Assembly: GCA_002269645.1 (NCBI GenBank)
Contig: NIVC01001461.1
Span: 121,313 to 185,312, forward strand
From: Macrostomum lignano
Taxonomy: Eukaryota
Length of the DNA: 64,000 bases
Reading direction: 5' to 3'
In this document: positions 1 through 40,200 of the stretch, piece by piece
Position numbering within the stretch: position 1 is the stretch's first letter
How the letters are laid out: each line of letters starts with the position of its first letter
The notes under the pieces: model-generated
Seen by the model: the letters and a program-made list of their open reading frames with translations, nothing else
Told to the model about the DNA's origin: nothing
Database searches by the model: none
Made by a program: the position numbers and the translations under genes

Positions 1-153
1 AACATAAAAGAAGCAGAGCCGTTCAAAAATCAAAGTCTGTGAAACAAGGAAAAGCATATTTTAAAAGACTTGCCCTTTTGCCCTTTTATTGCATGGAAAT
101 TCGCAAGCAGCGAAGCGGACAGGCAGGAGTTACAGCGGCCGGCAGTTACACAC

Positions 154-296
154 CTGCAGTCCTGCAACTGAATGGTCGGCACGCGGCCCCTGCATCGCCT
201 GTCGCCGCAGGCTGAGGTTCTCCTCGCGCAGCACCTTCACCCGCTCCTGCAGCTGCGCCATCGTCATCGCCGACGCGTCCACGCTGCCTCCCTCGG
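154..296 (-). CDS. Internal exon of an unidentified coiled-coil protein (gene continues off the left edge)
   Basis: Acceptor ttctctacag|CC and donor CTGCAG|gtgtgt. GC-rich open frame EGGSVDASAMTMAQLQERVKVLREENLSLRRQAMQGPRADHSVAGLQ with heptad character. ORF 541..861 may contain an upstream exon (unconfirmed). Confidence 0.6.
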
Positions 297-307
297 CTGT
301 AGAGAAT

Positions 308-470
308 ATCTATACAAGGACTGCAAGGACCATGCATACTCTGGATGCTGCTCCGCTTTCCATATGACAAGTCGGAGGGCACTGAGCATCGACAGCAGCT
401 CCGCCAGAGCGGAGAACACGAGCAGAACAGCAACGAGAATACGCACGGTCCCTGCAGTCCTTGTAGAGAT
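308..470 (-). other. Long imperfect inverted repeat / RNA hairpin (46-bp arms 308-353 and 425-470)
   Basis: Arms align without gaps with 8 differences. Five are transitions that form G.U pairs on the minus-strand RNA. Confidence 0.8.
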
Positions 471-1182
471 GCTTGGAATGGACAGAGCTGGCTTTGTTAG
501 TCGGAGTGGATTGATGAGCCTCACTGTGAGACATGCACACTCATATGTACAGTATATAGTGCTGGGAAGAGATAAGCATTGGTGTTCTCCCATACATCAC
601 GCCTCCGTGTGGGATAAATCTCAGTGAGTGGACCGGAAGGTGAGCACCCTGTGACTTGCTGCTAGAAGCAGATTTACGAGCGAGGCTGAGCGGGGTTGTT
701 TGACTCGACCTGCGTGGGGTGGGTCTGTGTCTGTGGCACTGTCCGGTAGGTAGCCGTGCTTTTTCTACGCCTTTCAAACCTCGCTTTGTGCTCAGAATCG
801 CTCGTTCTTGCTTAGGGCGTTGAATTTTTGCACTCCTGAGTAGCACCTCCGGATTGCACATGCCCGAGACTGCAAAAAGTCTAAAGGCTAGTGGAAATAA
901 CTTGAAATAATTGAAATAGTTATATCCTCAATAATGATCGCGAATCATCAGCGAAAGCTACTGAGAAATGAGAGTAACTCGTAGCAATCAAGTAAGGAAA
1001 GAGTATTTACGAGTCTCTTTGTGCCAAAAAAATAATAATGCGCCATATACTAATGAGGTTGTTGGATATAGGCATCTATATGTGATAGATTTCAGAAAAA
1101 ACGGCGCAACCAATTTTCACGAAACTTGCTGCCGTTGAAATATTTCCTCCTAAATCATCTCAGTCTATACCCAGTGGCAAAG

Positions 1183-1216
1183 CCGAGCTCGGTCCGAGCT
1201 CGGGCCGACGTCGGCC
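1183..1216. other. Three adjacent perfect palindromes
   Basis: CCGAGCTCGG (1183-1192), CCGAGCTCGG (1194-1203), GGCCGACGTCGGCC (1203-1216). Confidence 0.75.
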
Positions 1217-1614
1217 ACTCGGCATTCTACCTCGAAGGTACGTGAAGCCTTTTTTACACTTTTCACGTACTCTCATTATAAAAACTACATATCATTTCTT
1301 GTTCGTTCTCTCGACAAAAAAACAAGTTTACGCACTTAGAGCTCTTGCTTCGCTTTACCTTCACAAATAAAAACCAACTGCTGAACCATTCGATCAGAAA
1401 AATTGTCTCGTGGCAGTACTATACGTGTCGTGTGACTATAATAATTAAATTGCTCAGTGCTAAAAGGAATTAAATACTCGAAAACATATGCTTTTTGTAA
1501 AGATCAAGCAGATTTTTCGACTTACAGTGCATTGTATGTGTTCTGTTGTTGAATTAACGAACGCAGAAACAAGATAGATAATTATCCGGGCGCTCAGTGG
1601 CACCAAAAGAGGGG

Positions 1615-1735
1615 TTGGCCAATAGGAGGGCGGCTCGTATATTTATGCACGCGGGGAAGGAAAGTTCTAGAAAGACCGGGGAAGGAAACTTCTGGAACTA
1701 TGCGTAAACAAGTCCGCGGTGGAAGTTTCTAGAAA
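1615..1735. promoter_or_regulatory. Promoter between divergent genes, with CCAAT box, GC box, TATA-like element and three heat-shock elements
   Basis: CCAAT ~1619, GGGCGG ~1628, TATATTTAT ~1638. Perfect nGAAnnTTCnnGAAn at 1659-1673, 1684-1698 and 1721-1735. Confidence 0.7.
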
Positions 1736-2542
1736 CGCTGTCCCCGAACTACCCCTACGCCTCGCATGCCTTTGCAATACACAACAGTATGAATGCTAGA
1801 GAAAAAACTGACTGGCTAAATTCTGATTCCGATGGAGATTGCATCAAAGCGGAAAGCGCAAGTATATGAATGGAGCTATGAAACAAACACTTTAGACGAG
1901 CCTTCTGCATTTTTGACCACGCTTTGGCCCGTTTTTAGTTGCCTTTGTCACCACTTGACTCGCAATTTTTTTACAATGAACTTTTTGCTGCATTTTTGTG
2001 CAACTTTTTGGTGCACAGTGAGAACCAAAACCAAAACCAAAACTTTTTGCCGGCGCAGTCGTTTGTAAATTATCTTTAAGCGAAAGCTCTTCTAGTCATT
2101 AATTTCATGATATTTAAAATTTTAAAAGTAAAAACAAGCGTAGTCTTTTAAAAGGCTTTTTTCTTATGCCACAAATTGACACAATTTGTTTTTCTGCTAA
2201 ATTGTTAAAAAGGAAATTTTTTTAGTTTAGAACTATATTGCATATATTTAAATAGTTTTGGCAGAATTGGCAGAAATTTGTCGCTAGATTTCTTTGTTCA
2301 TAAAGCTACCACTGAATTTTATCTTGTTTAAAGTCATCAAGGGCAGATAACTATAATTTGGGCGAAGTCTGCTTGCCCTTGTCGTTTTTTCTCTGTTGAG
2401 CAAATAGTATTTTCGCCTGGCCGAGAGGCCTATTTTGACTTTGCCTTACCAGCACTTACTCAGCGTCAGCTTAAGATGAAGCTGAACCTATAGTTTTAAT
2501 ACTAACTCCTATATATTGTGCCAGCCTACGATATCTACAGCT

Positions 2543-5500
2543 ATGGAAGATCAAAGTGCTTTTGGTGTTGGTTCTGTAGATGGATATGGAAAGCAAGCGC
2601 AGCAGGGTCAGAATTTAGGTGAAGAAAATCCAACAGATGGTAGCAACACAAAAGATCCGTTTTACACAATGCCAGGAGTTTTGCACTTTCTACAAACTGA
2701 GTGGTCTAAGTTTGAGATGGAACGATCTCAATGGGAGGTAGAGCGAGCAGAACTACAGGTAAGTTACTAAAAATTCAATGGCAAATCTAACTAGACTCTA
2801 GAGGACTAGGGCCTATTTTTCTTATGTTGGCTCTGGTTCAAGTGTTTTAAATTAAAACGTTGAGTGCTTAACTATTCACTATCTGCAAGCAAGCCATTTT
2901 TAGTAGTGGGCCTAGTTGTTTTAGAAAATATATTTCAAAGTTACTAAGCATGTAATTAATAATTAATATCTTAGGCCTATGCTAATTATAACTATTTCTT
3001 TAGGAGCATTTTAAAGAACTAAGTATATTATTTATAAAATTAATTTGCTTTATTCTTTTAAACTGTTAAATGATACCTTTATTATAACAACTCTATAATT
3101 AGCAAAAATTAAAGCAGCTTGCTATTGTAATATTGTTTCAATCAACTATATTACATATATTATATAATATATATATTATACATTATATATTATACATATT
3201 TATAGATTTTTCAATTATAATATTTGATTTTTATCTTTCATAGCACATGGCATATCATATCATATAAGATAACTTTGGCCAATTGTTTTTTATCAATGTT
3301 AAACTGACATTAAGATATATATAGCTAAAGAAGTGACTTGTGAGATAGTTGTATATTAGACAACAAGTGAATTAGGATGGCTAACTAAGGCCCAAGGCCC
3401 CAGCAGTAGAGCAACCAGAAATTTTTTGAAAGGGGACAGATTCTAGATTTTAAAGACCAAGGCAAGAAGAGAGGCAAAGGGGCTAGCTTAGTATTTTGGC
3501 AAAAATGCACTTGGTCCCCTAACTCCCCTCTTAATTAGCTGATTTTTATCAAGTCTTCACCTAAGGGCCAAGAAGGGCAAATTTCCCTTCCTTATCCCCT
3601 CTTGGTTGCATTTTTGCTTGCTAGCCTCAAATTTAAACATTATTGTCATAAATTCTATAAATTCTATAAATGAAAGTTTCTATAAATACACAGTATCTTG
3701 CGTAATAAATAGACAATTTACTGAATTTATTGAACGATAATAGGCATCTACTGAACGATTTCTGCCATAGTCAGGAAGGTGGCACAGTGTGTGCTAGAAT
3801 AAATTTTTGGGACAATCTGTGCGCCGTCTATGTGCCCTCTATGCACCATTTGTGCGCTGTCTGTGCACCATGTCTATGCCTTTATTTTACATATTTTATG
3901 TAAATTATGTATTTTACAACAAATTTACAAAATTCTTAGAATTCATGCAGACAATATGCTATGCCAGTTTTATGCTAATAAAGATTCTATTCTGATTCCT
4001 TATGTACCAAAGTTATGCACAGCACCGCATATGTCAAGGACCTTATGCACCACATAGGGACCTCAGTGTGCATCATGATTGTGCGCCGCATGTGCCAGGG
4101 ACCTCAGTGTGCGCCATGATTGTGTGCCAAGTGCGCTAAGGACGCCCTGATTGCAGCGCATGGGCATTTTGGCGGACGGCGTCCGGCGCGGATCTAATAC
4201 AGCGCGGTGCGGCGCGTACGGCGAGCAGCAATTAGTACGGCGCGGCGCGGTACTAATTAGATGCCGAGGCATTTACGCTTGATAAGACAGTCATAGTTAC
4301 TCCTGCCGTTTACCCAAAACTGCGTTAATTTTGCTTTAGGGTTTCTTTCACAGGTAAGTCATTTCACAGCGTGGCGCAGGTTGTGTAGGCGTCTGGCGTA
4401 CTTAAGCCATGCGCTGCAATAGGGAAGGACGCCTTGTATGCACCGGAATTTTCCATGGCAAAGGCTACCTTCCTGACTATGGGCCCCAGGATAGAATTCT
4501 TGCATAAAAGTTGTTACGCATTTGTGCGCGCTGAAAAGGAGCCTACTTGCACACTCTTAAAGAAGTTGTTTGCACATTCCATCGTATGCACTTGTGCAAG
4601 AAGCTGTTTGCCACAGAATCATAGACAGGATTTGACTTTTACATGCATTAACATGGTTATGTGCCGTGTGGCGTATGTGCGCTCAAGTTCTCCTACTTTT
4701 CATAGTCTGGAAGGTGTTTTTACTTAAACTTTTTTTCTCTAAAAATATATTTATAAAGATAATATTATAAATATTAGTTTATTATTTAACATACAAATTC
4801 CAATCAGAAAATTGCATTTTCCCTAGTTTTTACTAAAGCAATTTAGAAAATTCTTTTTTGTGCATACATGCTACAATGATACATATTTAAGTGTAATTTC
4901 ATTGTTCTTTCTTACCTCATAAGCCTACAAGAAGCATTTTATTTATATGCCAGGTTCAAATTTTGTAGTACCATTTTTACCCAAAACTTTTAGTCTAAAT
5001 ATAGGCATATTACATACACTAATATTATACAAGTTAATATTTAAATGAAAAAAACATCTTAAAGATTTTTTGCAACAAGGAATTAGCAGTATATTTACTT
5101 TTAGAAAAAATATTTTTAGTATATTGGATGTTTGCTGGCAAACTTTGAACTTTAAATTAGTGGTTTTCGAAAAACTTAAAAATCCTTAGAAATTGTTTAT
5201 CTTTTTGAATAAAATAAAAAGTAAAGCAGAATACTTTCTGTTTTGTAAGTAGTGAAAACAATAGCCTTATTTTAGGTCTACAAGTCTTAAAATTAATTGT
5301 TTATCAATAAAAAAGTGAAACAAAAATTGTGAATTGGTTGACTCAAACATTTAAAATTCTTTTTTGTGGTTTTTTACTTATCTATTCAATAATGTAAAGT
5401 ATGAAAACAATATTTTTTTATCTAAAATTATTGTTAAAGACTTATCTGTCTTTCAAAAAGCTTTTTTCAATACATTACCTTCTATCAAATGTCTGCAGAT

Positions 5501-8500: not shown

Positions 8501-11500
8501 CAACAGCGCGGCCGAAGCATTCAAGAGCAGCTGTCCAGCCTCATTCCCGGCATCAATATTGCCGGCGACGACGAGGATGACGACGAAGATGACGACGCTG
8601 ATGACGCCGACGTTGATGTTGGCGTCGGCGGCAGCGGACGGCTCGTCAGAGGCGGAGGAAAAACTGCGCTGTCTGAGGAGGATCAGGTGAGCAAAGCTGG
8701 CTTAATCCGCGATGCCAGTTTTTAAAAGTACATCATGGAGATGCTATAAGATAAAAGTACCAGCGAGATTCAGGTGTTATAGAGGATTTGGAATTAAGTT
8801 GTTGTAGCCTAGTGGTTAAGAGCGTCAAACTCACGACTGAAAGGTCGGGGGTTCGATTCTCGACCCACTCTGAACAACTTTTGTCCATGAGCGCTCTGGT
8901 TTCGGGACGATGTCGCCGAAGGCGTTGCGTCGAGGTGCGCACAGCCCTCGTGCGAATATTATTAGTGTTGTATAGATACTAATAATAGGGATTTAAGATA
9001 AAAGTACATTAAGGCGTTACTACGATAGACTGTAGACAGGTGTAAGATTGCTTCAATATTAAGGTGAGGTGGTGTAGGTAAAACAGAAGTACGCATTGCT
9101 TTATTTGTGATTTAAAAAAAATTAAATGTTAACTTGAGGGGTTGGCTAAAAGTTCATTAATTTAAAAGTACATCTGGGCGTCAGTAAGGTGACAAATCCA
9201 TGGTGACAAATCCGCAGGCCATGGCCACCTTCGACTTCGTGCTGGACCAGCAGGACTCCGACATTCAGCAGCCGGCTGAGGACTCTAAAGACTCCGCAGC
9301 CGCTGCTGTTGCCGGCGGCGAAGACGGCGCCGGAGGCGTCGACGAGGACGCCGAGTGGAACCTGGATGAGCGAACCCGGTCCAAGATGGAGGCCTTCAAG
9401 AAAGAGCGCATCAGGGGCTCGAAGAAATCCACCGGAAGCGCTGGCGGCGGCAGCGGCGGCGGAAGAGTCGGCATGCTGGACGCTTTTCTTGACGGCTTCG
9501 ACCGCGGCGAGGAGGGCGGCACCGTTGACGACTTCGACGGGGTGACGCCCAGCAGCGCGGCCGCTGCTGCCGTGGCCGCCTCCGAGGAGGAGGGCTTCCG
9601 GTCCGCTATGGGGCTCAGCCTGGGAGACCTGCAGGTTTGCGCGCGACTGTTGAAAGATTTCAGGAGATCTCTGTAAATGGATTTAGGACTGGGATCTCTG
9701 TGAATAGCTTTGGAATCTCGGTGAATAGCTTTGAGATCTCTGTGAATAGCCTCGAGATCTCTGTGAATAGCCCTGGCATCTCTGTGAATAGCTTTGGGAA
9801 CTCTGTGAATAGCTTTGGGAACTCTGTGAATAGCTTTGAGATCTCTGTGAATAGCCCCGGGATCTCTGTGAATAGCTTAGAGATCTCTGTGAATAGCTTT
9901 GAGATCTCTGTGAATAGCTTTGGGATCTCTGAATAGCTTTGAGATCTCTGTGAATAGCTTTGGGATCTCTGTGAATAGCTTTGGGATCTCGGTGAATAGC
10001 TTTGCGATCTCTGTGAATAGCCTTGGGATCTCTGTGAATAGCCTCGGGATCTCTTTGAATAGCCTCGGGATCTCTGTGAATAGCTTTGGGATCTTGGTGA
10101 ATAGCTTTGAGATCTCTGTGAATAGCCTCGGGATCTTTGTGAATAGCTTTGGGATCTCGGTGAATAGCTTTGAGATCTCTGTGAATAGCCCCAAGATCTC
10201 TGTAAATAGCCTTGGGATCTCTGTGAATAGCTTTGAGATCTCTGTGAATAGCTTTGGGATCTCTGTGAATAGCTTTGGGAACTCTGTGAATAGCTCTGAG
10301 ATCTCTGTGAATAGCTTTGGGATCTCTGTGAATAGCCCCGGGATCTCTGTAAATAGCCTTGGGATCTCTTTGAATAGCCTCGGGATTTCTGTGAATAGCC
10401 TCGGGATCTCTGTGAATAGCCTCGGGATCTCTGTGAATAGCTTTGCGATCTCTGTGAATAGCTTTGGGATCTCTGTGAATAGCTTTGGGAACTCTGTGAA
10501 TAGCTCTGAGATCTCTTTGAATAGCCTCGGGATCTCTGTGAATAGCTTTGAAGTATCTTTCTCTCTAACGCTTCCCACGCCCCGTGCCCCCAAATCCCAG
10601 AACATCGACGTGACCAACGAGCGCGACTACGACGACGATGTCGGCATTTCGGCCGGCGGATCCGCCTCGGCCCGCCGCACCTGGGCCTCCAAGTTCAACC
10701 TGCGCTCCCACCTGGACAGCGTTCGGAGCCTGGCCTTTCATCCCACCGATTCGGCCCTGCTGACGGCTTCCGAGGATGGCACAATGAAGCTGTGGAATCT
10801 GAGCGGCAGAGCCGTGCATCAGGTGCGGTGAATGGCTGAGGACCAGGCGGGGAAGGGATCAGGAGGGAGAGGGGATCAGGAGGGAGAGGGGATCAGGAGG
10901 GAGAGGGGATCAGGAGGGGAGAGGGGATCAGGAGGGAGAGGGGATCAAGAGGGAGAGTGGATCAGGAGGGAGAGGGGATCAGGAGGGAGAGGGGATCAGG
11001 AGGGAGAGGGGATCAGGAGGGGAGAGGGGATCAGGAGGAGAGGGGATCAAGAGGGAGAGTGGATCAGGAGGGAGAGGGGATCAGGAGGGGGAGAGGGAGT
11101 CAATTGGAGAGGAGATCAGGGGGAGGGAAGGGGTATCAGGAGAGAAGAGATGGAGAAGACATGCGGATGTAGGAAGAATAAGGAGGAAGCATCGCAATGT
11201 TGATAACCTAAAATCCGCTTGACCGCCCGGCACTCCAGGAGGCGGGCTCGCCCACATCGGCAGGGTCGGACAGCCAGCGCTCGGCAGGCGGCACGGCCGG
11301 TCCCCAGGTGGAGCTGGAGCCGGTGCACACATACCGCGGCCACGCTGGCCCTGTGCTGACCGTCTGCGTCTCTCCCGACGGCGGCCTCGCCTGCACTGGC
11401 GGCCTGGACGGCTGCGTGCGGGTCTGGCGGCTGCCGCCCAGCCTGTCCGGCCTGGACCAGTACGACGCCTTCGATGCCAGCCTGGTCGGCGAAGCTCTTG

Positions 11501-19317: not shown

Positions 19318-22300
19318 TCAGCAAACCGCGGCAGCCCCGCCAGACTGTGAGGACGAAGACGAGGACGACAGCCGCTTCTTCCTGCAGACGCCGTCGGGAT
19401 CGGAGGCGCTGTCGGAGCCGCCGCAGCCGCTGTCCCCGCCGCCGGGGTGCAGGCAGCAGCCGACGATCCCGGAGCCGGACGGGCCGCCGCCGCCGTTACT
19501 GTCGCCGTCAGCGGCCTCGGCAGCTGCCGACTGCAGCGATGCGACGTTGCCCGAGGCTGCCAGCGGGTCCACAGATGAGCCCAGGTAATCCAGGCTGTTC
19601 AAATTCATGGGCAATCCGTCCAGCTGGGCGGCTTTCAGCATCCGCTTGTCCAGATTGCGCCTGTGGAGGATGGGCAATTCGGACTGGTCATGCACACTTG
19701 TGATCTGGTCATTCGAACTGGTCATGCACACTTGTGATCTGGTCATTCGGACTGGTCATGCACACTTGTGATCTGGTCATTCGGACTGGTCATGCACACT
19801 TGTGATCTGGTCATTCGGACTGGTCATGCACACTTGTGATCTGGTCATTCGGACTGGTCATGCACACTTGTGATCTGGTCATTCGGACTGGTCATGCACA
19901 CTTGTGATCTGGTCATTCGGACTGGTCATGCACACTTGTGATCTGGTCATTCGGACTGGTCATGCACACTTGTGATCTGGTCATTCGGACTGGTCATGCA
20001 CACTTGTGATCTGGTCATTCGGACTGGTCATGCACACTTGTGATCTGGTCATTCGGACTGGTCATGCACACTTGTGATCTGGTCATTCGGACTGGTCATG
20101 CACACTTGTGATCTGGTCATTCGGACTGGTCATGCACACTTGTGATCTGGTCATTCGGACTGGTCATGCACACTTGTGATCTGGTCATTACGGATCGGTC
20201 ATAGACACCAGTGATCTAGTGATTACACAAAGCCAAGCCCTCACCTATACTCAGGTGTTATAGGATACAATCTGAGCACAATGAATGCTGCAACCACTAG
20301 CAGCATAGGTAGAGGGCCCATCATGACTCGCAGAGCGTAGCCAACCATCTCAGGCTGATGGCAGGAAGGCGGCAGCTGATAGCCGGTGAGGTGAAGTCCC
20401 AGCTGCAGACAGGCGGTGCTAATGCCCACAGCGAACTTGTTGAAGAACACGTACAGGCTGTAGAAGGCGGCCTCGTCCCGCCGACCGGTGCTGACCGTGT
20501 AGTCATCGATGACGTCGGGCAGCATAATCCAGGGCAGCAGCATGTTGATGCTGACGTAGCAGCCGGCCACCACCATGGTTGCGTAGTACTGGGGCACGAA
20601 TTGCACTCTGGGGTTGGCGGGGGGGGGTTGGATGGCTTTGTATTCTGCTGCTTGTTTGATCGGAAATTCACTCTGGATTCATAAAAATGGCAGCCCTGGA
20701 TTTGCAAAAATGGCGGCCCTGGATTTTCTCAAAATGGCGGCCCTGGATTTGCAAAAATGGCGGCCCTGGATTTTCTCAAAATGGCGGCCCTGGATTTGCA
20801 AAAATGGCGGCCCTGGATTTTCTCAAAATGGCGGCCCTGGATTTGCAAAAATGGCGGCCCTGGATTTTCTCAAAATGGCGGCCCTGGATTTGCAAAAATG
20901 GCGGCCCTGGATTTTCTCAAAATGGCGGCCCTGGATTTTCTCAAAATGGCGGCCCTGGATTTTCTCAAAATGGCGGCCCTGGATTTTCTCAAAATGGCGG
21001 CCCTGGATTTGCAAAAATGGCGGCCCTGGATTTTCTCAAAATGGCGGCCCTGGATTTTCTCAAAATGGCGGCCCTGGATTTTCTCAAAATGGCGGCCCTG
21101 GATTTTCTCAAAATGGCGGCCCTGGATTTGCAAAAATGGCGGCCCTGGATTTTCTCAAAATGGCGGCCCTGGATTTGCAAAAATGGCGGCCACGGATTTT
21201 CTCAAAATAGCGGCCCCGGATTTGACGAAAAATGGCGGCCCTGGATTTGCTCAAAATAGCGGCCCTGGATTTGAAAAAATGACGGCCCCGGATTTGACAA
21301 AAAGTGGCGGCCCTGAATTTGCAAAAATGGCGGCCCTGGATTTGCAAAAATGGCGGCCCTGGATTTGCAAAAATGGCGGCCTGAATTTGCAAAAATGGCG
21401 GCCCTGGATTTGCAAAAATGGCGGCCCTGGATTTGCTCAAAATGGCGGCCCTGGATTTGCTCAAAATGGCGGCCCTGGATTTGCTCAAAATGGCGGCCCT
21501 GGATTTACAGATTTACATAAACAGTCACTCTTAAAAATGCCCCTGTGACCTTAAAAATGGCCCATAGACAACAAACTGGCACTTGAGGAGTTACAAAAAT
21601 GGCCCATAGACAACAAACTGGCACTTGAGGAGTTACAAAAATGGCCCATAGACAACAAACTGGCACTTGAGGAGTTACAAAAATGGCCCATAGACAACAA
21701 ACTGGCACTTGAGGAGTTACAAAAATGGCCCGCGTGACAAACCTGGCAGGACAAAAAGTGGCAGACAGGCAGACAGGCAGTATCAGAGCCAGTCCGATGA
21801 TGAAGACGCGCTTTTTGCCCAGCCGCCGGATCAGATAGAACACCAATGGGGTGACCAGGATGGCCGTTACCATGACAACGGCGATAGCGAATTTCAAATG
21901 CGGCTTCATTTTCAGACTGTAGATGGTGTACAGAGCCAGGCTGTTCTGCACAGTCTGGATAGCCAGGGAGCTCAGCATGAAGCTCAGCATGAGCAGCCGG
22001 TAGGGCCGGTGGCAGAGGCAGCTCCGGAACGTGGCCAGCATGCTGTCGCTGTTTGAGTCGGCGACGGCGTTGCCCAACGTTGGTTTGGCCTGCTTGACCT
22101 CGGCGGCGATCTCCTTGGTGCCGAAGAAGCCGATGCCGCCGCACAGCAGCACCACGGCGCCGATGATGGACGCGCCAAGGCGGTAGCGGGCCTCCTCCTC
22201 TGGGGACACGTGGGCTGTGGCCGGCGCGGACTGGTTGCTAGGCAACAGGCTGCCGTTGGAGTGACTGTTGCCCGATGCCGAGGCCAGGGTGCACCTGTCC

Positions 22301-22388
22301 GGCCCGATCTGCGTGATGAAGGTGAAGGTCATCACGCCGAACAGGGTGCCGACCATCTCGAATACCATTCCTGCGGGTGGGTGGCGAT

Positions 22389-29899: not shown

Positions 29900-30977
29900 T
29901 AATAATAATAATAGTTACGCCCCACGCCAGCCATAGAAGTGGCCAAAAGGGGGGAGCGTCAAATCGCGCGTTTCAGAACTACGTCTCTAATGTGCTTCAC
30001 ACAGGCCGCCTGGCTGGGTGCTCGCGCATCTTCAAAAAGGCGGTCGACGTAGCGGGTAGCCTGCGCGGTCCCGCGGTGTCCACAGCAGGACGTCCTGCAG
30101 CGGCTCTGGGCAGTAAGCTTCGGCCCGGATGACATGTCCGGCCAGCCGCAGGCGCCGCTGACTCAGCAGGGCAGAAGGCCGCGTCAGGCCTGTGCGCTTG
30201 TACAGGGACTCGGTTGTCTCGCTGCCAGGGCCGCGGCGGGCGCCGAAAGCGGCGCGGACTAGGGCCGCATGTGCCGCGTCGAGCTGCGCCTCAAGCGCCC
30301 CGGTCAGCGTCCAGGTCTCAGCATTGTACAGCAGGGCGGTCTCAACAACCGCCTGGAACAGCTGGGACCTGGCGCCGTCGGACAGGGCCTCGGAGAGCAG
30401 CACCGCCCGCACAGATCGGAAGGCAGCCCATGCCTTGCCGCGCCGTCTCGCTAGGTCGTCGCCGACGTCCGGCACCAGTCCGCCGAGGTAGACGAACTGA
30501 AGGCACTTCGGGAGCGCCGTCCCGGGGCCGTCGCCGTCTCGAAGTCGAATCTCGGCGGGTAGATCATGCGGCACCGTCAGCACCTCGGTCTTCCTCGCGT
30601 TGATGACGAGACCGACCCTCGCCGCCGCCGCAGTCAAGCCGTCCAGCAGCCGTTGGGCGCCTTCGGCCGTCGAAGACAGCAGGACGAGGTCGTCCGCGTA
30701 GCCAAGGACAGACAGTTTCTTCTCCGGGTGCCGTCTACTGGTGCGCCTTTGCAGCAGAAAGCCGTCCTCTGATGTCGGCAGGCCAATCCTGAGCACCCAG
30801 TCCATCACCAGCACGAAGAGAAAGGGCGCCAGAGTGTCACCCTGTAGCACTCCGGACGTCGTGCTAAACAGGTCCGACGGTCCGTCTGGCGTCGCTACCG
30901 CGGCGGTGGTGTCCTGATACAGCGCCATGATGGCGGAGATAAGCTGCTGCGGCACGTTGTAGGCACGGAGCACAGCA
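29900..30977 (-). mobile_element. 5'-truncated RTE-type non-LTR retrotransposon (RT C-terminal half, 3' UTR, (ATT)n tail)
   Basis: ORF 30032..30973 with TTSGVLQGDTLAPFLF, LGYADDLVL, GLVINARKTEV and FVYLGG RT motifs. The minus-strand end reads GGGGCGTAACTATTATTATTATT. Confidence 0.92.
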
Positions 30978-32241: not shown

Positions 32242-35200
32242 CTATCGGTGGTCGCGGTACATCTTTGTGAACGTTTCGCCAAATAATCGACGCAACTCGT
32301 TGCGCATAGCCTTGAACGTTGGCGTCAGGAGGCCGTTCTCAACGCTAAACGGCTCGTGGTGCAGGTGTATGTCCCGCACCTGCAAGTGACAGGATGGTAA
32401 GCGATATAGCCTCATACTAGCTGCTGAATGCATTCTAAAACCTACATGTAAATTGGCGTTGGAATGGATTGAAGTTGGAATTGGTTGTAAAGGGCCTTAG
32501 CGAGACACATGTAGTACATTTCGATTCGATATATCACTGAGCCTCCATTACCGCATATGATTAGCCTTTACACAAAACCAATTGCGCAGTAAAACTTTAC
32601 ATACGATGTCGCCGTACCTGCTCGAAAGACTTGAGATCATTAGCCTTCCCCGTGGCTTGCATACTCTGCAGGATCTCCGTTTTTAGTTCCAAATCGTTGC
32701 ACAGGTCTTTCAAATTTTCCGGTTTGCGCCGCTTCTTTGCCCAAGCCATCACAGCCTCCGGGTTGGGCACAACCGCGGCCAGAATGAAATTCTCCAGGCT
32801 GTCTCCGTGCACGAACACCTGATACACGTAGACGTTGGTGCTGTAAATCTGTTCAATCTTTTCTGGAGCAACGTACTCGCCCTGGGACAACTTGAAAATG
32901 TGCTTCTTTCGGTCGATGATCTTCAGAAAACCGTCGCTGGTCCATTGACCAATGTCACCCGTGTGCATCCAGCCGTCGGAGTCCATGATCTTGGCCGTCT
33001 CCGCTTCCATTTGGAAGTAGCCAAGCGTGACGTTCAAGCCTTTGATGCAGACTTCGCCCGAGCCGTCTTTAGCGTAGTAGCCCATTTCCGGGACGTCCTG
33101 CAGCTGGACGACGTTGTTGAACAACGGCATGCCGACGTTGCCCGTCTGCGGGTTGCCTGGAAGCGTGACAGTGGAGCCACCTGTGGTCTCCGTCTGGCCG
33201 TAGCCTTCCACTACCGGACAGCCGAAGGCCGCCCTTGAGAAGCGCATCACCTTTTCGGCTAGAGGAGCGGAGCCCACAATGACCAGCCGGATGCGGTTGC
33301 CGGTGGAGGCCTGCTCAATGGGTTCAAAATAAATTTGCTGCTTTTTTCTGGACTTTATGATCGTTTTGAAATTTAGAGCCCAAAATATAAATTATAAAGC
33401 TGATTTGAGACTTGCTGGAGGAACGCCTCACATTACTGATGACCACTACCATAACCTGAATGGTCGATTTTTCACCGCGCTAATCGCGTCTTTCCACAAT
33501 TTTTCATTGCCTTCCTTCCTAAAACTGCCTTGTACATTTTCACTGCACAGTGGTGTACGCAGAGGGGCACAGGTGTCATTAGTACGTGTACGTCAACAAA
33601 ATTCGCCTAAGTGGTCTATCTACTAGTTACAGTACGCGATCATGAGTCATGACCAATGCATCAACGTTAATAACAGGGAGCTCTCACCTGAATCTTGCTA
33701 AACACCAGCGAGTCCCAGATGGAATTCTTCCGAATGACTCGCCGATTAACTTCATTAGTTTTGCGTCTAAGCGCCATGCGGAAGATGGCAGCCCCAAGAC
33801 AGTTGGAGTTCGCCTGGGCCAAGGTCTTGTCGTAAATCCGATTCAGCAGCCGAGGCACCGTGCAGAAAATGGTCGGCTTGAGCTCCTTCATGTCGTCGAC
33901 TAGAGTGAGAATGTCGCCACGGTAGAATCCGATTCTCATGCCATGCATGAAGCATAAAACGTGCATAATTCGCTCGAAGATGTGAGCCAGAGGCAGGTAG
34001 CTCAGGTAGACGTCATCGCAGCTGGCGGTGGACACGTACTGTGAAATTTCCGGGTTTGAAGCTGTCGACACCTTCTTCACGCTTAAATAGACTCAGCCAG
34101 ATAAAATATTGTCGACAGTCAATCGAATCAATTAACTGTCGGCAACCTCAAACTTTAGCAAACTTGTTCTCTCACCTGCTTGCCGTGAGTTATCAAAAGG
34201 TCCGTCATGGCCAGCGATTCGGCTATTAAATTGCCGTGCGTAATTTGAACGCCCTTCGGGAGGCCTGGGTGCAAAAGCAGGGGGAAAATATTAAAGAATG
34301 TACGAGCTAAGAATGCGATTCTCCCCATTCATACTGTCCTTGTCTGCTCACATCTGTCTAATTTCAACATTTTGTGCTTTTGCCATAATAAACCTTGACT
34401 GCTGCTTTCCCAAGCCTGTGGTTTCGGTTTTGCCGGTAGACTCCATTGACCTACAGCGTATTGGCTATTTCTGTCTTCGGAGGGGCATTATATAAAACTG
34501 GAGAACGCTACACCTGTTGAAATCAGTTTCTTAGTTTCCGAGGTCCGGGATTGCTCTCGTTTGTAGCAATTTTAGAAGGAAAATGATTTGTTGATTTCTG
34601 CATACGCGCCATGCATTCATCAGATACTTAATGGAATAGGACTCGCGACAAAAAAACTACATGTAAGGCTTCAAAGACTGTCAAACAACTTGAAGAGACT
34701 TGATTTTAGATACGTTTGCCTCTGAGATTCATTTTCCCTTGACGCACCGGTAGTTCCGCTGGTGTAGCACAGCAGAGCCAGGCTTTTCCTGTTGGGCTGC
34801 TGGCGCTGCTCGACTGGATTTTCCCGCCCTGCCTTCAGCGCCTCCTGCCAGCCCCAGGCCTGCTGCTTGATCTCGTTGACCTTTGGTATCCGGCCGCTCA
34901 GCTGAATGATGTGCAGGATCTGGGCGGAGTTCTTCAAGCGCAGCAGATTGGTCACGTGCTGGGGAGTCTCGCACAGGATGACACTAATGCGAGTCTGCAT
35001 CAGAATGTGGTCCGTGGCCTCCGGGCCCAAGGTGTCGTACAGCGGCACTGGGGTGAGGCAGTACAGGTAGCAGCCGAGCTCCAGTATCACCCACTCGGCG
35101 CGGTTCTTGGTGTAAATTCCCACAAAACTTTCCGGCGGCAGTTTGAGAACGGCGGCCAGGAATGCACCGATGTTGAGCGCTTCGGTGAACACCTATAAGT

Positions 35201-37260: not shown

Positions 37261-40200
37261 TCAGAAATAGTGCGTCTCCGGCTGCCACCGAGCACTTCCT
37301 CCATTATTGTTTGACCCAGCCGAGTCCTGGTGCAAGTAGCAGCTGGGATAGACCGATGCCCGTCTCTGTCGGTAGCTTCCAGCGCTGAGCTCCATCAAAA
37401 CAGTCGAACGCCGGTTGGAGGATTCACCGCAGCCACGGGAACGGCATCCGCATCTTCTGGCGAACTGCTGACCCACAGCGAGCCGGATGTAGCTCAGCAG
37501 CAGGTCGAGAATCTCCAGCACTGTCAGCACGCTGACACCGATCCACAGGCCGAGGTTTCCGCCAAGATCCGACAGAAGCTTCTCCATGGTGTAGGCCAGC
37601 TCCTCGACCTCCAGATCGGCCAGGTAGCTCTCGGCCAGGACGTCGATTTTCGTGACTCGCTGCTCGAGCTCGCTCATCGGCAGACTCCGATTGTTGGCGA
37701 ATTCGTTGAGCACGGTGAATCTGTAGGAGTTTGATGGAGTCTGAGTCAGTGTTTTCAGCGGATACTCTTGTTAGATAATGAAGACGAAGCGAAGGGAAAG
37801 GAGAGGCTGAGAAAGACGGCGATGAAAAGAAGAGTAGATGGTGAATGAAGGTAAAACTTAAGGTACATTTAAGCACAGATACTATAAACACTAGATAGGC
37901 CACTCCAGCTAATTTTCACAACACGACAGTTTACTCTACTTTCTGCTTAGTAGTAGTAAAAACATTTTAGCGTTATTTATATTTTTTAAAAATAAAAAAA
38001 CAGATGAATGCAATGCAGCAATTGTATTGATTTTTTTGCAAAAAGAAACTTATAATTATACTTTCCACAATTCAAAGCAACATTGTGAATGCTTTAGATT
38101 GCATAGAAGGCTATATTATTGCAGTCAACTATTGTATATTTAGCAAATACGAGCTATATCATATACTCCATAATCCATATTCGTGTAGCAAAATAGAAAG
38201 ATTTCTCATCTTAATCAGCTCATCTGTTTGTGAAACTCGCAGCGTGCTGTTGAAGAACAGGGTCGCCAGTCGCCCTTGTTCAGAGGCAGCATTCAGAACG
38301 GCCCAACAGATGAAAAAAAACTGGCGAATGCGCCACTTCAAGGTCCAGGGATGTATCCGATGGAGAGCCAATCCTCAGTGGTTTCGTAACAGGCAGCCGA
38401 TAAGCAGCAGGACTTTTGTGGTGCAGCTGCAATGAGCTGCTGATGAGATGACATCCTTTGACCAGAGCACCCCTGACTGCGAGCGCCCTGCCGCCCAGTC
38501 GACCGCTGGAAGCTGCGCTAGCCACGCCTCCACAGTCCATGGATGCACGACTGCGCTGCACTTGCCTTGACCATCGAATGTTGCCGCTGCAGCCGCTTGA
38601 TTTGCCTGTCGCTTTCGGGATTGCCGCTGCAGCCGCTTGATTTGCCTGTCGTTTTCGGGATTGCCGCTGCAGCCGCTTGATTTGCCTGTCGCTTTCGGGA
38701 TTGCCGCTGCAGCCGCTTGATTTGCCTGTCGTTTTCGGGATTGCCGCTGCAGCCGCTTGATTTGCCTGTCGCTTTCGGGATTGCCGCTGCAGCCGCTTGA
38801 TTTGCCTGTCGTTTTCGGGATTGCCGCTGCAGCCGCTTGATTTGCCTGTCGCTTTCGGGATTGCCGCTGCAGCCGCTTGATTTGCCTGTCGCTTTCGGGA
38901 TTGCCGCTGCAGCCGCTTGATTCGCCTGTCACTTTCGGAGTCGGGATCGTTGCTGCAGCCGCTTGATCGTTGCCTCTAGCGCTTGGAACCCGCGAATCGG
39001 CTGCAGAGGTGAGAGCTTTCAGCCGCAACAGCTGTTCTCGGCGCAGAATCTGGTAGCCGAAGGTTGCTCTGCCACAGCACTGGCAGCAGGCAAGTCGCAG
39101 GCTCGGCTGCAGATAGATTGCTAATTGGCCCCAGCACTGGAGGGTACATGTCGTCTGCCTCTTCATCGTTTATCAGTCCTTTGCACAGAGGGTAGCTGGT
39201 CTATTTGAACGAGCCGAGGCAGCATCAACTCTTGGTGTGGGATTGCGTCCCAGCGAAAACAGATGTCTTGCACATCCGTGGCACTTTGTAAGGCAGCAGT
39301 AGGCCTCGTCCATAAAGTGCAAGCTGAACACACGGAGGCCCCGTGATTTAATTGTTTATAAAGGTCAATATCCACGCTCCTGCAGTAGCTGCTGCCAGCG
39401 CTTCGCCAGTGTCATCTTTTGGTAATTTATGCATTCGCAACGGATTTTTCTTTCTCGGATGTTAATAGCACTAGTACAAAGCTCGTGCAAGTGGGAGCAC
39501 AGCAGTGGTTCGAATCAAAACATTTCTCGAGTACAAGATTAGATAGAAAAGCTAGTATGCACTCGAACTTTCTTTAACTCTGACTCTTGTCCTGTTCATC
39601 TATATAAGCTTGTATTTAAGCACGATTCGCCACCCCCAAATTTTCTAACCCACAACCTCTCAACCCCCACCCCTAACCCAGGCTAGCTATGTGCAGTCCT
39701 TTATTTTCTATCCCACCACCAGTGGGCCTAAATTATCGATCCACTCACCCTGCCTTATACGAAACTGATATTAACCCTATTCCAGACTACCCCCCTTCCT
39801 CCACTTTGAAAGATAGCGGCATTGCACACTGTCTGTCGCGTCTTAATGTACACCATTACTGCACAAAACAAGTTAGTTGTTTATGGCGTTAGCAAAACGA
39901 TGTCTTAAAAACAGTCACTCGATTTGTCTAATTTAGCAAATAATACTGTTGCTTCCTTTCATTGCTACTAAGCAGAAAGTAGAATAAAAAACTTGCCCAG
40001 AAAATTAGCCTGAGTGGCCTATCTAGTGTTTATAGTATCTGTGCATTTAAGCGTCGAATATTCCAGTCAAGTAAGTTCATAAAACCAAATGAAGTTGACT
40101 GTGTGAACTATACTAGCGGGCTTTAGCGGAGAAGGTGCAAATAGGTGCTTTGTTTAAGCAAATTGCTTAACAGAAAATACTTTTCCTATAGTTTGACTCC

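What the first reader, a model, noticed from the sequence alone, without database searches (positions are those of the whole stretch)
308..470. Intronic 46-bp RNA hairpin with strand-specific G.U signature abutting a splice acceptor
Seen: arms 308-353 and 425-470 are inverted copies with 8 differences. All five transitions give G.U pairs on the minus-strand RNA (A.C mismatches on the plus strand), and minus is the strand of the host exon. The stem ends about 11 nt before the acceptor at 297/296 and would cover the branch/pyrimidine region. The 71-nt loop has extra pairing (CTCCGCT/AGCGGAG). Inference: a selected RNA structure (hpRNA or miRNA-like precursor, ADAR substrate, or splicing switch) rather than a neutral DNA inversion.
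Basis: partly seen in the sequence, partly recalled or inferred. Interest (0 to 1): 0.7.

Follow-up and report, generated by a model that had tools for sequence, protein, structure and literature searches.

The report
Old inverted-repeat hairpin beside a pseudo-exon
The 163-base hairpin is real, but it lies in unannotated DNA between two flatworm genes, next to a broken backwards copy of a neighbouring exon, and it changes as fast as the junk DNA around it, so it is most likely an ordinary leftover of DNA rearrangement rather than a selected RNA switch.

Summary
Arms 308-357 and 421-470 pair over 50 nt at 82%. All six transition mismatches are A.C on the plus strand and G.U on the minus strand. 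The minus-strand RNA folds at -94.5 kcal/mol and the plus strand at -75.5.

The window is Macrostomum lignano contig NIVC01001461.1:121313-185312. The hairpin lies between a plus-strand coiled-coil gene and plus-strand striatin, and GenBank annotates no gene over it. The "host exon" (296-154, minus) is a truncated, inverted copy of about 220-240 bp of the upstream gene's penultimate exon. The "acceptor" AG sits exactly where that homology starts.

A homeologous locus (L002) also carries the hairpin, but there it evolves at the local neutral rate: 7-9 substitutions and 3 indels in 161 nt, against 4.1% in the neighbouring intergenic DNA. One further stem change in L002 again gives G.U on the minus strand, making 7 of 7 (two-sided p = 0.016). 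Other M. lignano foldbacks show mixed, sometimes skewed, orientations.

My best reading is a neutral, old foldback repeat at a rearrangement junction. A selected minus-strand RNA, an ADAR-type plus-strand duplex and a MITE all remain open. Interest is low to moderate.

The parts
308..357 (.). Left arm of the inverted repeat. It is the 3' arm of the minus-strand RNA hairpin.
   Evidence: the repeat finder I1; mismatch table. Present in homeolog L002 at 8887-8940 with a 3-nt CAT insertion, a 1-nt insertion, A336->G and A308->C.
358..420 (.). 63-nt spacer or 'loop'. It contains a local palindrome, CTCCGCCAGAGCGGAG (399-414), and AGCGGAG (408-414), which can alternatively pair with CTCCGCT (351-357).
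   Evidence: Sequence; MFE structures. In L002 a 2-nt deletion shortens the 399-414 palindrome and there are 2 substitutions.
421..470 (.). Right arm of the inverted repeat. It is the 5' arm of the minus-strand RNA hairpin.
   Evidence: L002 differs at 446 (C->T), 447 (G->A) and 452 (C->T), and has a 1-nt T insertion.
298..305 (.). 8-mer TGTAGAGA. It is a direct repeat of 462-469 and an inverted repeat (7/8) of 309-316, so 298-316 is a small palindrome at the base of the stem. On the minus strand it reads UCUCUACA, the pyrimidine-rich run before the AG.
   Evidence: Script scan for flanking direct repeats; sequence. Conserved in L002. It is not a canonical target-site duplication, because the right copy lies inside the arm.
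297..302 (-). Acceptor-like hexamer CTACAG|CC (minus strand). The A comes from the 8-mer and the G is the first base of clear homology to the parent exon.
   Evidence: It matches the M. lignano SL trans-splice acceptor motif [T/C]TNCAG (PMC8629364). Use of the site is unverified.
154..296 (-). Pseudo-exon: an inverted partial copy of the penultimate exon of the upstream plus-strand coiled-coil gene (parent at L001 about 5070-5218). It ends at a GT (CAG|GTGTGT).
   Evidence: blastn and MAFFT. Relative to the parent it has an 11-nt deletion and an 8-nt insertion. L002 instead has a +2 insertion and lacks the 8-nt insertion. No gene is annotated here.
79..153 (-). Remainder of the inverted duplicate, derived from the parent's downstream intron (parent at L001 about 5219-5272). 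It is much more diverged than the exon part.

Best explanation
The hairpin is an old, passively inherited DNA-level foldback. A 50-bp segment was copied in inverted orientation 63 nt away, and the copy now sits in intergenic DNA of Macrostomum lignano.

Location and neighbours:
- It lies about 1.7 kb downstream of the stop codon of a coiled-coil gene.
- It lies about 2.1 kb upstream of the acceptor and ATG of striatin.
- It directly abuts a second rearrangement product, an inverted fragment of about 220-240 bp copied from the coiled-coil gene's penultimate exon.

Inferred origin (not shown): a palindrome-associated break or template switch, in the manner of fold-back priming or templated-insertion repair, produced both structures at one junction. 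The same event left the small palindrome and 8-mer repeat at the stem base, and by juxtaposition created an acceptor-like CTACAG.

Shown history: both arms have since drifted to 18% divergence. The locus was then duplicated with the genome, and the two copies have gone on diverging at the local neutral rate.

Any RNA that crosses it will fold into a stem of about 50 bp. That could be the striatin outron on the plus strand or an unannotated upstream-antisense RNA on the minus strand. On this reading the folding is a by-product and not a selected function, and the one-sided G.U pattern is a sampling fluctuation.
For: 1. Position. The window is 100% identical to NIVC01001461.1. No gene is annotated between L001 6021 and 10001, and both neighbours are on the plus strand.
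2. The adjacent 'exon' is an inverted, truncated duplicate whose clear homology starts at window 297, 11 nt from the stem. An 8-mer repeat and a small palindrome occupy the junction.
3. Neutral tempo between homeologs L001 and L002:
- The neighbouring intergenic DNA has 57 substitutions in 1387 nt (4.1%) and 20 indels.
- The hairpin has 7-9 substitutions in 161 nt and 3 indels.
- The two arms together have 5-7 substitutions where 4.1 are expected.
4. There are no compensatory double changes. The loop mini-hairpin is eroded in L002. The L002 minus-strand energy falls to -83.5 kcal/mol against -78.6 for its plus strand.
5. The transition-to-transversion ratio between the arms is 6:3, as expected for neutral decay.
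6. Foldbacks are common in this genome. About four separate foldback elements occur in the 29 kb of L004, with mixed G.U orientation.
7. There is no Rfam family at gathering or relaxed thresholds. No other copy exists in about 170 kb of M. lignano DNA.
Against: All 7 distinct transition mismatches (6 in L001 plus 331/447 in L002) give G.U on the minus strand, with a two-sided p of 0.016. Four of the five stem substitutions between homeologs interconvert Watson-Crick and G.U on that strand. The chance of that is about 0.04 if each neutral substitution has a one-in-three chance of doing so (my own estimate).

The hairpin has survived roughly four times longer than the homeolog split, judged by arm divergence of 18% against 4%.

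The origin mechanism is inferred from adjacency only.

GenBank's annotation deliberately omits non-coding transcripts (PMC5730564), so the absence of a gene there does not show absence of transcription.
Confidence: 0.4

Rival explanations
1. Selected minus-strand RNA hairpin. An unannotated RNA is transcribed leftwards, for example divergently from the striatin upstream region. It folds into the 46-50-bp stem, which tolerates G.U pairs. The stem would then act in one of two ways. It could be a Dicer or Drosha substrate, giving a lineage-specific miRNA-like or short hpRNA locus. Or it could sequester the branch-point region upstream of the CTACAG acceptor and so control cis- or SL trans-splicing of the exon-like segment.
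For: - 7 of 7 transition mismatches are G.U on the minus strand.
- Minus-strand folding is 19 kcal/mol better than plus in L001.
- CTACAG matches the SL-acceptor motif.
- The exon-like segment is unusually conserved between homeologs: 1 substitution in 136 nt, Poisson p = 0.025 against the local rate.
- That segment keeps an ATG-to-GT open frame in both copies.
- M. lignano has Drosha, Dicer and Argonaute (PMC4604429) and factors that amplify the RNAi signal (PMC5594548).
- The annotation omits ncRNAs.
Against: - Substitution and indel rates in the stem are neutral.
- L002 has three indels in the stem, and its strand asymmetry shrinks to 5 kcal/mol.
- There is no compensatory change.
- The architecture is wrong for a canonical animal pri-miRNA or a mirtron (membership tests).
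- The arms show no homology to any possible target in the sequence at hand.
- No downstream exon is visible.
- Comparator foldbacks show that orientation skews arise without regard to the host strand.
Confidence: 0.2
2. Decayed MITE or other non-autonomous DNA transposon. On this reading the arms are terminal inverted repeats of a 156-163-bp element that inserted next to the exon fragment before the genome duplication. It is inert now.
For: - The size, the absence of coding capacity and the long inverted termini fit.
- An 8-bp direct repeat TGTAGAGA flanks positions 306-461, and 8 bp is the hAT-type duplication length (the hAT length is from my own knowledge).
- TA dinucleotides flank the core CAAGGACTGCA...TGCAGTCCTTG.
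- Foldback and MITE-like repeats are frequent in M. lignano loci, and one has a second partial copy nearby.
Against: - The 8-mer's right copy lies inside the arm. With those boundaries the inverted repeats are not terminal, because they are offset by 11 nt.
- No direct repeat flanks the true ends of the inverted repeat at 308 and 470.
- There is no second copy in about 170 kb of M. lignano DNA, counting homeologous copies.
- The arm pattern has no hit in metagenome contigs.
- A search of 1.84 billion proteins with the translated hairpin found nothing.
- The sample can exclude only very high copy numbers.
Confidence: 0.2
3. Plus-strand duplex. The region is transcribed with the striatin outron or as read-through of the upstream gene. 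The six A.C mismatches are then the context that ADARs edit best, since A->I would turn each into an I.C pair. Editing would make genomic G->A changes, and U->C changes opposite an edited A, harmless, and that would produce the one-sided pattern.
For: - Both annotated neighbours are on the plus strand.
- Striatin starts 2 nt after a CTACAG acceptor, typical of an SL trans-spliced gene with an upstream outron.
- All transition mismatches are A.C on plus.
- The four post-duplication changes are two G->A and two T->C on plus under parsimony.
- ADAR1 and ADAR2 exist in planarian flatworms, where mRNA editing depends on ADAR2 (PMC8797187).
- The ADAR preference for A.C mismatches is from my own knowledge.
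Against: - ADAR was not examined in M. lignano here.
- The outron length is unknown. The hairpin is 2.1 kb from the acceptor, and the 1.2 kb between them is absent from the homeolog.
- The published operon criterion is under 1 kb after repeat subtraction, so co-transcription with the upstream gene is doubtful.
- The overall evolutionary rate is neutral.
Confidence: 0.1

Closest known systems
Foldback or inverted-duplication relics from fold-back priming, template switching or templated insertion at DNA breaks
   Same: It has two inverted arms with a short spacer. It abuts a short inverted copy of nearby sequence (about 220-240 bp, templated from 2.5 kb away). There is a microrepeat and small palindrome at the junction. 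It is single-locus and evolves at the neutral rate.
   Different: The mechanism is inferred from adjacency only. No breakpoint microhomology could be assigned unambiguously. The arms (18%) and the exon copy (about 7% in the exon part, over 25% in the intron part) give inconsistent ages.
MITEs (miniature inverted-repeat transposable elements), including those that gave rise to miRNA genes
   Same: It is 163 bp and non-coding, has long inverted termini, and folds into a long, near-perfect hairpin when transcribed.
   Different: There is no canonical target-site duplication at the repeat ends. No other copies were found in the limited sequence available. Mobility is untested.
Drosophila-type hpRNA loci (endo-siRNA hairpins)
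   Same: It is a genomic inverted repeat that would give an intramolecular dsRNA longer than a miRNA stem, in an animal that has Dicer and Argonaute.
   Different: From my own knowledge, hpRNA stems are usually hundreds of bp and are derived from, and complementary to, a target gene. Here the stem is about 50 bp and the arms match nothing else in the loci examined. No small-RNA data were available.
Canonical animal miRNA precursors and mirtrons
   Same: It is a stable hairpin. The lower stem, 308-342 paired with 436-470, is 35 bp before a small internal loop.
   Different: The total length is 163 nt, with 12 more base pairs and a structured 63-nt apical region. There is no Rfam family. The arms are not better conserved than the loop or the flanks. 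The hairpin ends do not coincide with splice sites: there is an 11-nt tail at the 3' end and no GU at the 5' end.
Stems that hide or reposition the branch point or 3' splice site, as in structure-dependent 3'ss choice in yeast introns
   Same: The stem ends 10-11 nt upstream of a YTNCAG. It would bury the usual branch-point window at 18-40 nt upstream.
   Different: There is no evidence that this AG is a used acceptor or that the exon belongs to a gene. The stem is not constrained between homeologs.

Membership tests
Canonical animal pri-/pre-miRNA | Hairpin of about 60-80 nt with a stem of about 35 bp capped by a simple apical loop | tested here: not met
   The element is 163 nt, with a 50-bp stem and a structured 63-nt apical region.
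Canonical animal pri-/pre-miRNA | Membership of a described miRNA family | tested here: not met
   No Rfam hit over 308-470 at gathering threshold or at E <= 10.
Canonical animal pri-/pre-miRNA | Arms evolve more slowly than the loop and flanks | tested here: not met
   L001 against L002 by MAFFT: arms 7 substitutions in 100 nt plus 2 indels; loop 2 in 61 nt plus 1 indel; neutral flank 4.1%.
Canonical animal pri-/pre-miRNA | Discrete reads of about 22 nt forming a duplex with 2-nt 3' overhangs | not testable with these tools
   There is no access to small-RNA libraries. Such libraries exist for this species (PMC4604429).
Mirtron | One or both hairpin ends coincide with the splice sites | tested here: not met
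   The 3' end of the stem (308) is 11 nt from the AG (298-297). There is no GU at the 5' end of the hairpin (470 and upstream).
hpRNA / endo-siRNA hairpin | Long inverted repeat giving an extended, near-perfect dsRNA | tested here: inconclusive
   The stem is 46-50 bp with 3 non-pairing mismatches. That is longer than a miRNA stem and much shorter than described hpRNAs.
hpRNA / endo-siRNA hairpin | Arms homologous to a target gene | tested here: inconclusive
   There is no match to the arms elsewhere in the window or in L001-L005, about 170 kb. The whole transcriptome could not be searched.
MITE | Terminal inverted repeats, small size and no coding capacity | tested here: met
   The open frames that cross it have no homologues.
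MITE | Target-site duplication directly flanking the terminal repeats | tested here: not met
   No direct repeat lies outside 308 and 470. The 8-mer TGTAGAGA (298-305 and 462-469) has its right copy inside the arm.
MITE | Many dispersed copies in the genome | tested here: inconclusive
   No extra copies in about 170 kb of M. lignano DNA, none in metagenome contigs and no translated matches. The 764-Mb assembly could not be searched.
ADAR substrate | Intramolecular dsRNA of roughly 30 bp or more in a transcribed region | tested here: inconclusive
   The duplex is predicted on both strands. Transcription is not established.
ADAR substrate | A-to-G differences between RNA and DNA | not testable with these tools
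   There is no RNA-seq access.
Splicing-regulatory stem | Lies in a bona fide intron or outron, upstream of a used 3' splice site | tested here: inconclusive
   The site matches the YTNCAG motif. No gene is annotated there. The exon is a truncated inverted duplicate with no visible partner exon.
Splicing-regulatory stem | Pairing maintained by selection (covariation or reduced rate) | tested here: not met
   No double-sided changes. The rate is neutral and L002 has three stem indels. Only the one-sided G.U bias argues for selection.

The most novel reading that the evidence does not exclude
The hairpin and the exon-like segment together form an unannotated minus-strand gene. It would be transcribed divergently from the striatin upstream region and SL trans-spliced at CTACAG. 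The stem upstream of the acceptor would be a flatworm-specific Dicer substrate (a short hpRNA or long-stem miRNA-like locus), or it would gate use of the acceptor. The retained sense copy of the neighbour's exon would link this RNA to regulation of the coiled-coil gene. That would explain both the 7 of 7 G.U bias and the unusually low divergence of the exon copy.
Probability: 0.12. Interest if true: 0.55.

Novelty: new member of a known kind. Interest (0 to 1): 0.22.

Why it matters
If the neutral reading is right, this is a worked caution about reading raw sequence. An exon-like open frame with AG and GT borders can be a rearranged fragment of the neighbouring gene. A one-sided G.U pattern in a single hairpin (p of about 0.02-0.03) is not enough to call selection or to assign the transcribed strand. 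The same data read as A.C mismatches on the other strand, and other foldbacks in the same genome show comparable skews.

The finding also documents a small complex rearrangement in M. lignano: a foldback together with an inverted templated exon copy, which predates the genome duplication.

If instead the minus-strand RNA reading is right, this would be a first candidate for a long-stem hairpin RNA locus in a macrostomid flatworm. The species has transgenesis, RNAi, small-RNA and SL-read data, so the question could be settled quickly.

Tried and rejected
1. Homologue search with the 48-aa exon peptide found nothing. From the tool appears to list only proteins up to about 1.75 times the query length, so this search was uninformative.
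2. The striatin N-terminus alone (201 aa) gave at best 59% identity. Only the rebuilt 843-aa striatin identified the species.
3. An exact look-up of ten window ORFs, including three that cross the hairpin, found none in the collection.
4. A metagenome scan with a 23-nt arm pattern gave 0 hits.
5. A search of 1.84 billion protein representatives with the translated hairpin, used as a proxy for dispersed copies, gave 0 hits.
6. Rfam at gathering and relaxed thresholds, and a tRNA scan, found nothing over the hairpin.
7. Homology between the hairpin and the intron upstream of the parent exon: the local alignment score of 19 is indistinguishable from shuffles at 17.5 +/- 2.1. I rejected it. A possible 11/13 match of window 298-310 to the parent intron after a 29-nt gap stays ambiguous, because the same bases are also the 8-mer repeat of the hairpin.
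8. The older striatin paralogue loci L004 and L005 have different neighbours and no hairpin, so they cannot serve as an outgroup.
9. Selection on long-range pairing between the parent exon and its inverted copy: 4 transitions split 1:3 and there are 6 transversions, which is no signal (read by me from the alignment).
10. Recent gene conversion from parent to copy as the reason the copy is so conserved: I rejected it, because both copies share states that differ from their own parents.
11. An operon with the upstream gene is unlikely, because the gap is 3-4 kb against the published criterion of 1 kb after repeat subtraction.

Full report
**1. The observation**

The repeat finder reports arms 308-357 and 421-470, 50 nt, 82% complementary, with 63 nt between them.

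A base-by-base comparison gives nine differences. Six are transitions (326/452, 332/446, 336/442, 339/439, 351/427, 354/424). Three are transversion-type (312/466, 343/435, 345/433). Every transition is A.C on the plus strand and therefore G.U on the minus strand.

Folding agrees with this:

| RNA | Energy (kcal/mol) | z-score |
|---|---|---|
| Minus strand, 298-480 | -94.5 | -9.6 |
| Plus strand, 298-480 | -75.5 | -6.5 |
| Minus strand, arms only | -78.9 | |
| Plus strand, arms only | -58.4 | |

The loop pairing CTCCGCT (351-357) with AGCGGAG (408-414) is real. It competes with a local palindrome at 399-414.

The repeat is much the stronger of only two inverted repeats of that size class in the 64-kb window. 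Its arm core occurs nowhere else there. No Rfam family or tRNA matches it.

**2. Where the window comes from**

The window is eukaryotic, and its introns are full of minisatellites. I rebuilt an 843-aa striatin from eight plus-strand exons. It matched Macrostomum lignano protein PAA67711.1 (BOX15_Mlig031478g1) at 97% identity.

The contig that encodes it, retrieved as locus L001, is 100% identical to the window over the 14 kb I compared. That places the window at NIVC01001461.1:121313-185312, running to the contig end. L001 also adds 7.5 kb to the left of the window.

The annotation there lists three genes:
- a plus-strand gene of 1262 residues whose CDS ends at L001 6021;
- striatin on the plus strand, with its ATG at window 2543;
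- an MFS transporter on the minus strand.

One caveat applies. The GenBank annotation of this assembly deliberately excludes non-coding transcripts and transcripts that overlap repeats (PMC5730564).

**3. The "host exon" is a rearranged fragment of the neighbour**

Self-comparison of L001 shows that window 297-139 (minus strand) is an inverted copy of L001 5070-5231, 82% identical over 170 aligned columns. A further 33 nt match just beyond it.

The parent segment is the penultimate exon of the upstream coiled-coil gene. It reads ...KAMAQLQERVKALREENLSLRRQAMQGPGGGRVPTIQVQ|GT and joins in phase to the last exon, which ends at 6021.

The parent's own polypyrimidine tract, its CAG and its first 10 exon bases are missing from the copy.

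The bases immediately outside, TGTAGAGA at 298-305, are a perfect direct repeat of 462-469 inside the right arm. They are also a 7/8 inverted repeat of 309-316, so 298-316 is a small palindrome at the base of the stem. The acceptor-like UCUCUACAG|CC is therefore a junction product. Its A comes from the hairpin-associated 8-mer and its G from the exon fragment.

The hexamer does match the published M. lignano SL trans-splice acceptor motif [T/C]TNCAG, as does the striatin acceptor CTACAG|CT two bases before its ATG (PMC8629364). Use of the site therefore cannot be excluded.

No partner exon is visible on the minus strand between the copy and the upstream gene's 3' end.

**4. A second copy of the locus allows a test of constraint**

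M. lignano carries three homeologous subgenomes, with about 2% SNP divergence between them (PMC10733133). The cluster of the striatin protein held two further M. lignano proteins.
- One gave locus L002, with the same gene order and an alignable upstream region.
- The third homeolog, L003, starts inside striatin and lacks the upstream region.

L002 carries the exon copy and the hairpin, the latter at 8887-9052 and 166 nt long.

Divergence between L001 and L002:

| Region | Substitutions | Indels |
|---|---|---|
| Neighbouring intergenic DNA | 57 in 1387 nt (4.1%) | 20 |
| Hairpin | 7-9 in 161 nt | 3 |
| Exon copy | 1 in 136 nt | 2 |

The three hairpin indels are all in the stem: a CAT insertion and a T insertion in the left arm, and a T insertion in the right arm. 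In the spacer of L002 a 2-nt deletion also shortens the 399-414 mini-hairpin. The two arms together show 5-7 substitutions where 4.1 are expected. The hairpin is therefore not evolving more slowly than its surroundings.

RNAalifold finds three one-sided changes that keep pairing and no double-sided change.

The stem substitutions between homeologs are as follows.
- 336 A/G, 446 C/T, 447 G/A and 452 C/T each interconvert a Watson-Crick pair and a G.U pair on the minus strand.
- 308 A/C breaks the terminal pair.

That brings the tally to 7 of 7 transitions giving G.U on the minus strand, with a two-sided p of 0.016.

In L002 the energy asymmetry shrinks: -83.5 kcal/mol for the minus strand against -78.6 for the plus strand.

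**5. How much weight the G.U bias can carry**

Three points limit it.

First, it is a single hairpin with a p of about 0.02-0.03.

Second, I used other M. lignano foldbacks as comparators. About four separate foldback elements occur in the 29 kb of the paralogous striatin locus L004, and one more in the window. Their plus-G.U to minus-G.U counts are 3:7, 1:4, 6:2, 1:1, 3:1 and 2:2. The nested element that totals 4:11 lies inside a plus-strand gene, yet it favours the antisense strand. Orientation skews therefore arise here without tracking the host strand.

Third, the pattern has a mirror reading. On the plus strand, which is the strand of both annotated neighbours, every transition mismatch is A.C. 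From my own knowledge, that is the context ADARs edit most readily. ADARs exist in planarian flatworms, where mRNA editing depends on ADAR2 (PMC8797187).

DNA sequence alone cannot separate three possibilities: G.U tolerated on the minus strand, A.C made harmless by editing on the plus strand, and chance.

**6. What it most likely is**

Shown:
- The hairpin is single-locus within the sequence available.
- It predates the homeolog split.
- It abuts a second inverted-duplication product.
- There is a microrepeat and small palindrome at the junction.
- It evolves at the neutral rate.
- No known RNA family matches it.

Inferred: both structures came from a break or template-switch event at or near a palindrome, and any RNA folding is a by-product.

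My probabilities are as follows.

| Explanation | Probability |
|---|---|
| Neutral local foldback at a rearrangement junction | 0.40 |
| Selected minus-strand RNA (Dicer or Drosha substrate, or a stem that masks the branch-point region of the CTACAG acceptor) | 0.20 |
| Decayed MITE | 0.20 |
| Plus-strand, ADAR-type duplex | 0.10 |
| Something else, such as a DNA-level element of the striatin upstream region | 0.10 |

I found no other copy in about 170 kb of M. lignano DNA, none in metagenome contigs, and no translated matches among 1.84 billion proteins. That excludes only very abundant families.

**7. Comparison with known kinds**

- It fails the defining architecture of canonical miRNA precursors and of mirtrons.
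- It is much shorter than described hpRNAs, and it lacks a recognisable target.
- It has MITE-like arms but no canonical target-site duplication.
- It resembles stems that occlude a branch point or 3' splice site only if the AG is really used.

M. lignano does have Drosha, Dicer and Argonaute (PMC4604429) and factors that amplify the RNAi signal (PMC5594548), so a small-RNA role is mechanistically possible.

**8. One thing left unexplained**

The exon copy is more conserved between homeologs (1 in 136 nt) than its functional parent exon (7 in 160 nt). It keeps an ATG-to-GT open frame in both copies, although through different frameshifts that change the encoded peptide. Against the local rate this has a p of about 0.025. 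Against the genome-wide rate of 2.2% it is unremarkable.

Recent gene conversion from the parents does not explain it, because the two copies share states that differ from their own parents.

**9. Verdict**

The intron, acceptor and host-exon context is not supported. Selection on an RNA structure is not demonstrated, and the neutral evolutionary tempo argues against it, although the one-sided G.U bias persists.

The feature is a new instance of a known kind, a foldback inverted repeat, and its interest is low to moderate. Mapping the existing small-RNA, SL-read and stranded RNA-seq data, together with a whole-genome BLAST, would settle the question.

Noticed in passing
window 79-310 (minus) and L001 5034-5272 (plus): An inverted partial duplicate of about 220-240 bp of the upstream coiled-coil gene's penultimate exon, with short flanking intron sequence, lies 2.3 kb downstream of the parent. 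If one RNA spanned both, they could form a dsRNA of about 200 bp. The mismatch pattern shows no sign of selection for that pairing.
   Followed up: yes
window 154-296 against L002 about 8746-8880: The exon copy differs by 1 substitution in 136 nt between homeologs, while the functional parent exon differs by 7 in 160 nt. Both copies keep an ATG-to-GT open frame through different frameshift indels. This is unexplained.
   Followed up: partly
window 644-1873: A segment of about 1.2 kb between the hairpin and striatin is absent from the homeologous locus L002. It is either an insertion in this copy or a deletion in the other. It begins right after a GTGAG donor-like site (AAG|GTGAGC, with the GT at window 639-640).
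   Followed up: partly
L002 9395-9465: The homeolog has its own palindrome with arms of about 20 bp (GGACTTCTTAAGCTAGCAC...GTGCTAGCTTAAAAAGTCC), and this window has no equivalent sequence.
   Followed up: no
L004 12730-13594, 14311-14617, 27293-27630, 10566-10891 and 22035-22134: Foldback inverted repeats are frequent in the paralogous striatin locus. They include a palindrome of about 870 bp with a second partial copy 1 kb away. All are shared with the homeolog L005.
   Followed up: partly
window 1182-1215: A GC-rich palindrome, GCCGAGCTCGGTCCGAGCTCGGGCCGACGTCGGC (21-nt overlapping arms, 86%), lies in the AT-rich stretch upstream of striatin.
   Followed up: no
window 7376-63700 (many sites): Introns and intergenic DNA are packed with minisatellites, with units of 8-47 bp and up to 95 copies. 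They create long spurious ORFs on both strands.
   Followed up: no
window 30032-30973 (minus): A 313-aa ORF carries the C-terminal half of a reverse-transcriptase domain (RVT_1, E = 1e-12). It is a retrotransposon fragment.
   Followed up: partly
window 20241-22368, 32597-35192 and 37261-44991 (all minus): Exons of an MFS transporter, an AMP-binding acyl-CoA synthetase-like gene and an amiloride-sensitive sodium channel (ASC) family gene.
   Followed up: partly
The search for homologous proteins: In these searches the tool listed no protein longer than about 1.75 times the query length. Single-exon queries therefore miss full-length proteins of the same species. The species was found only with a rebuilt full-length query.
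   Followed up: yes
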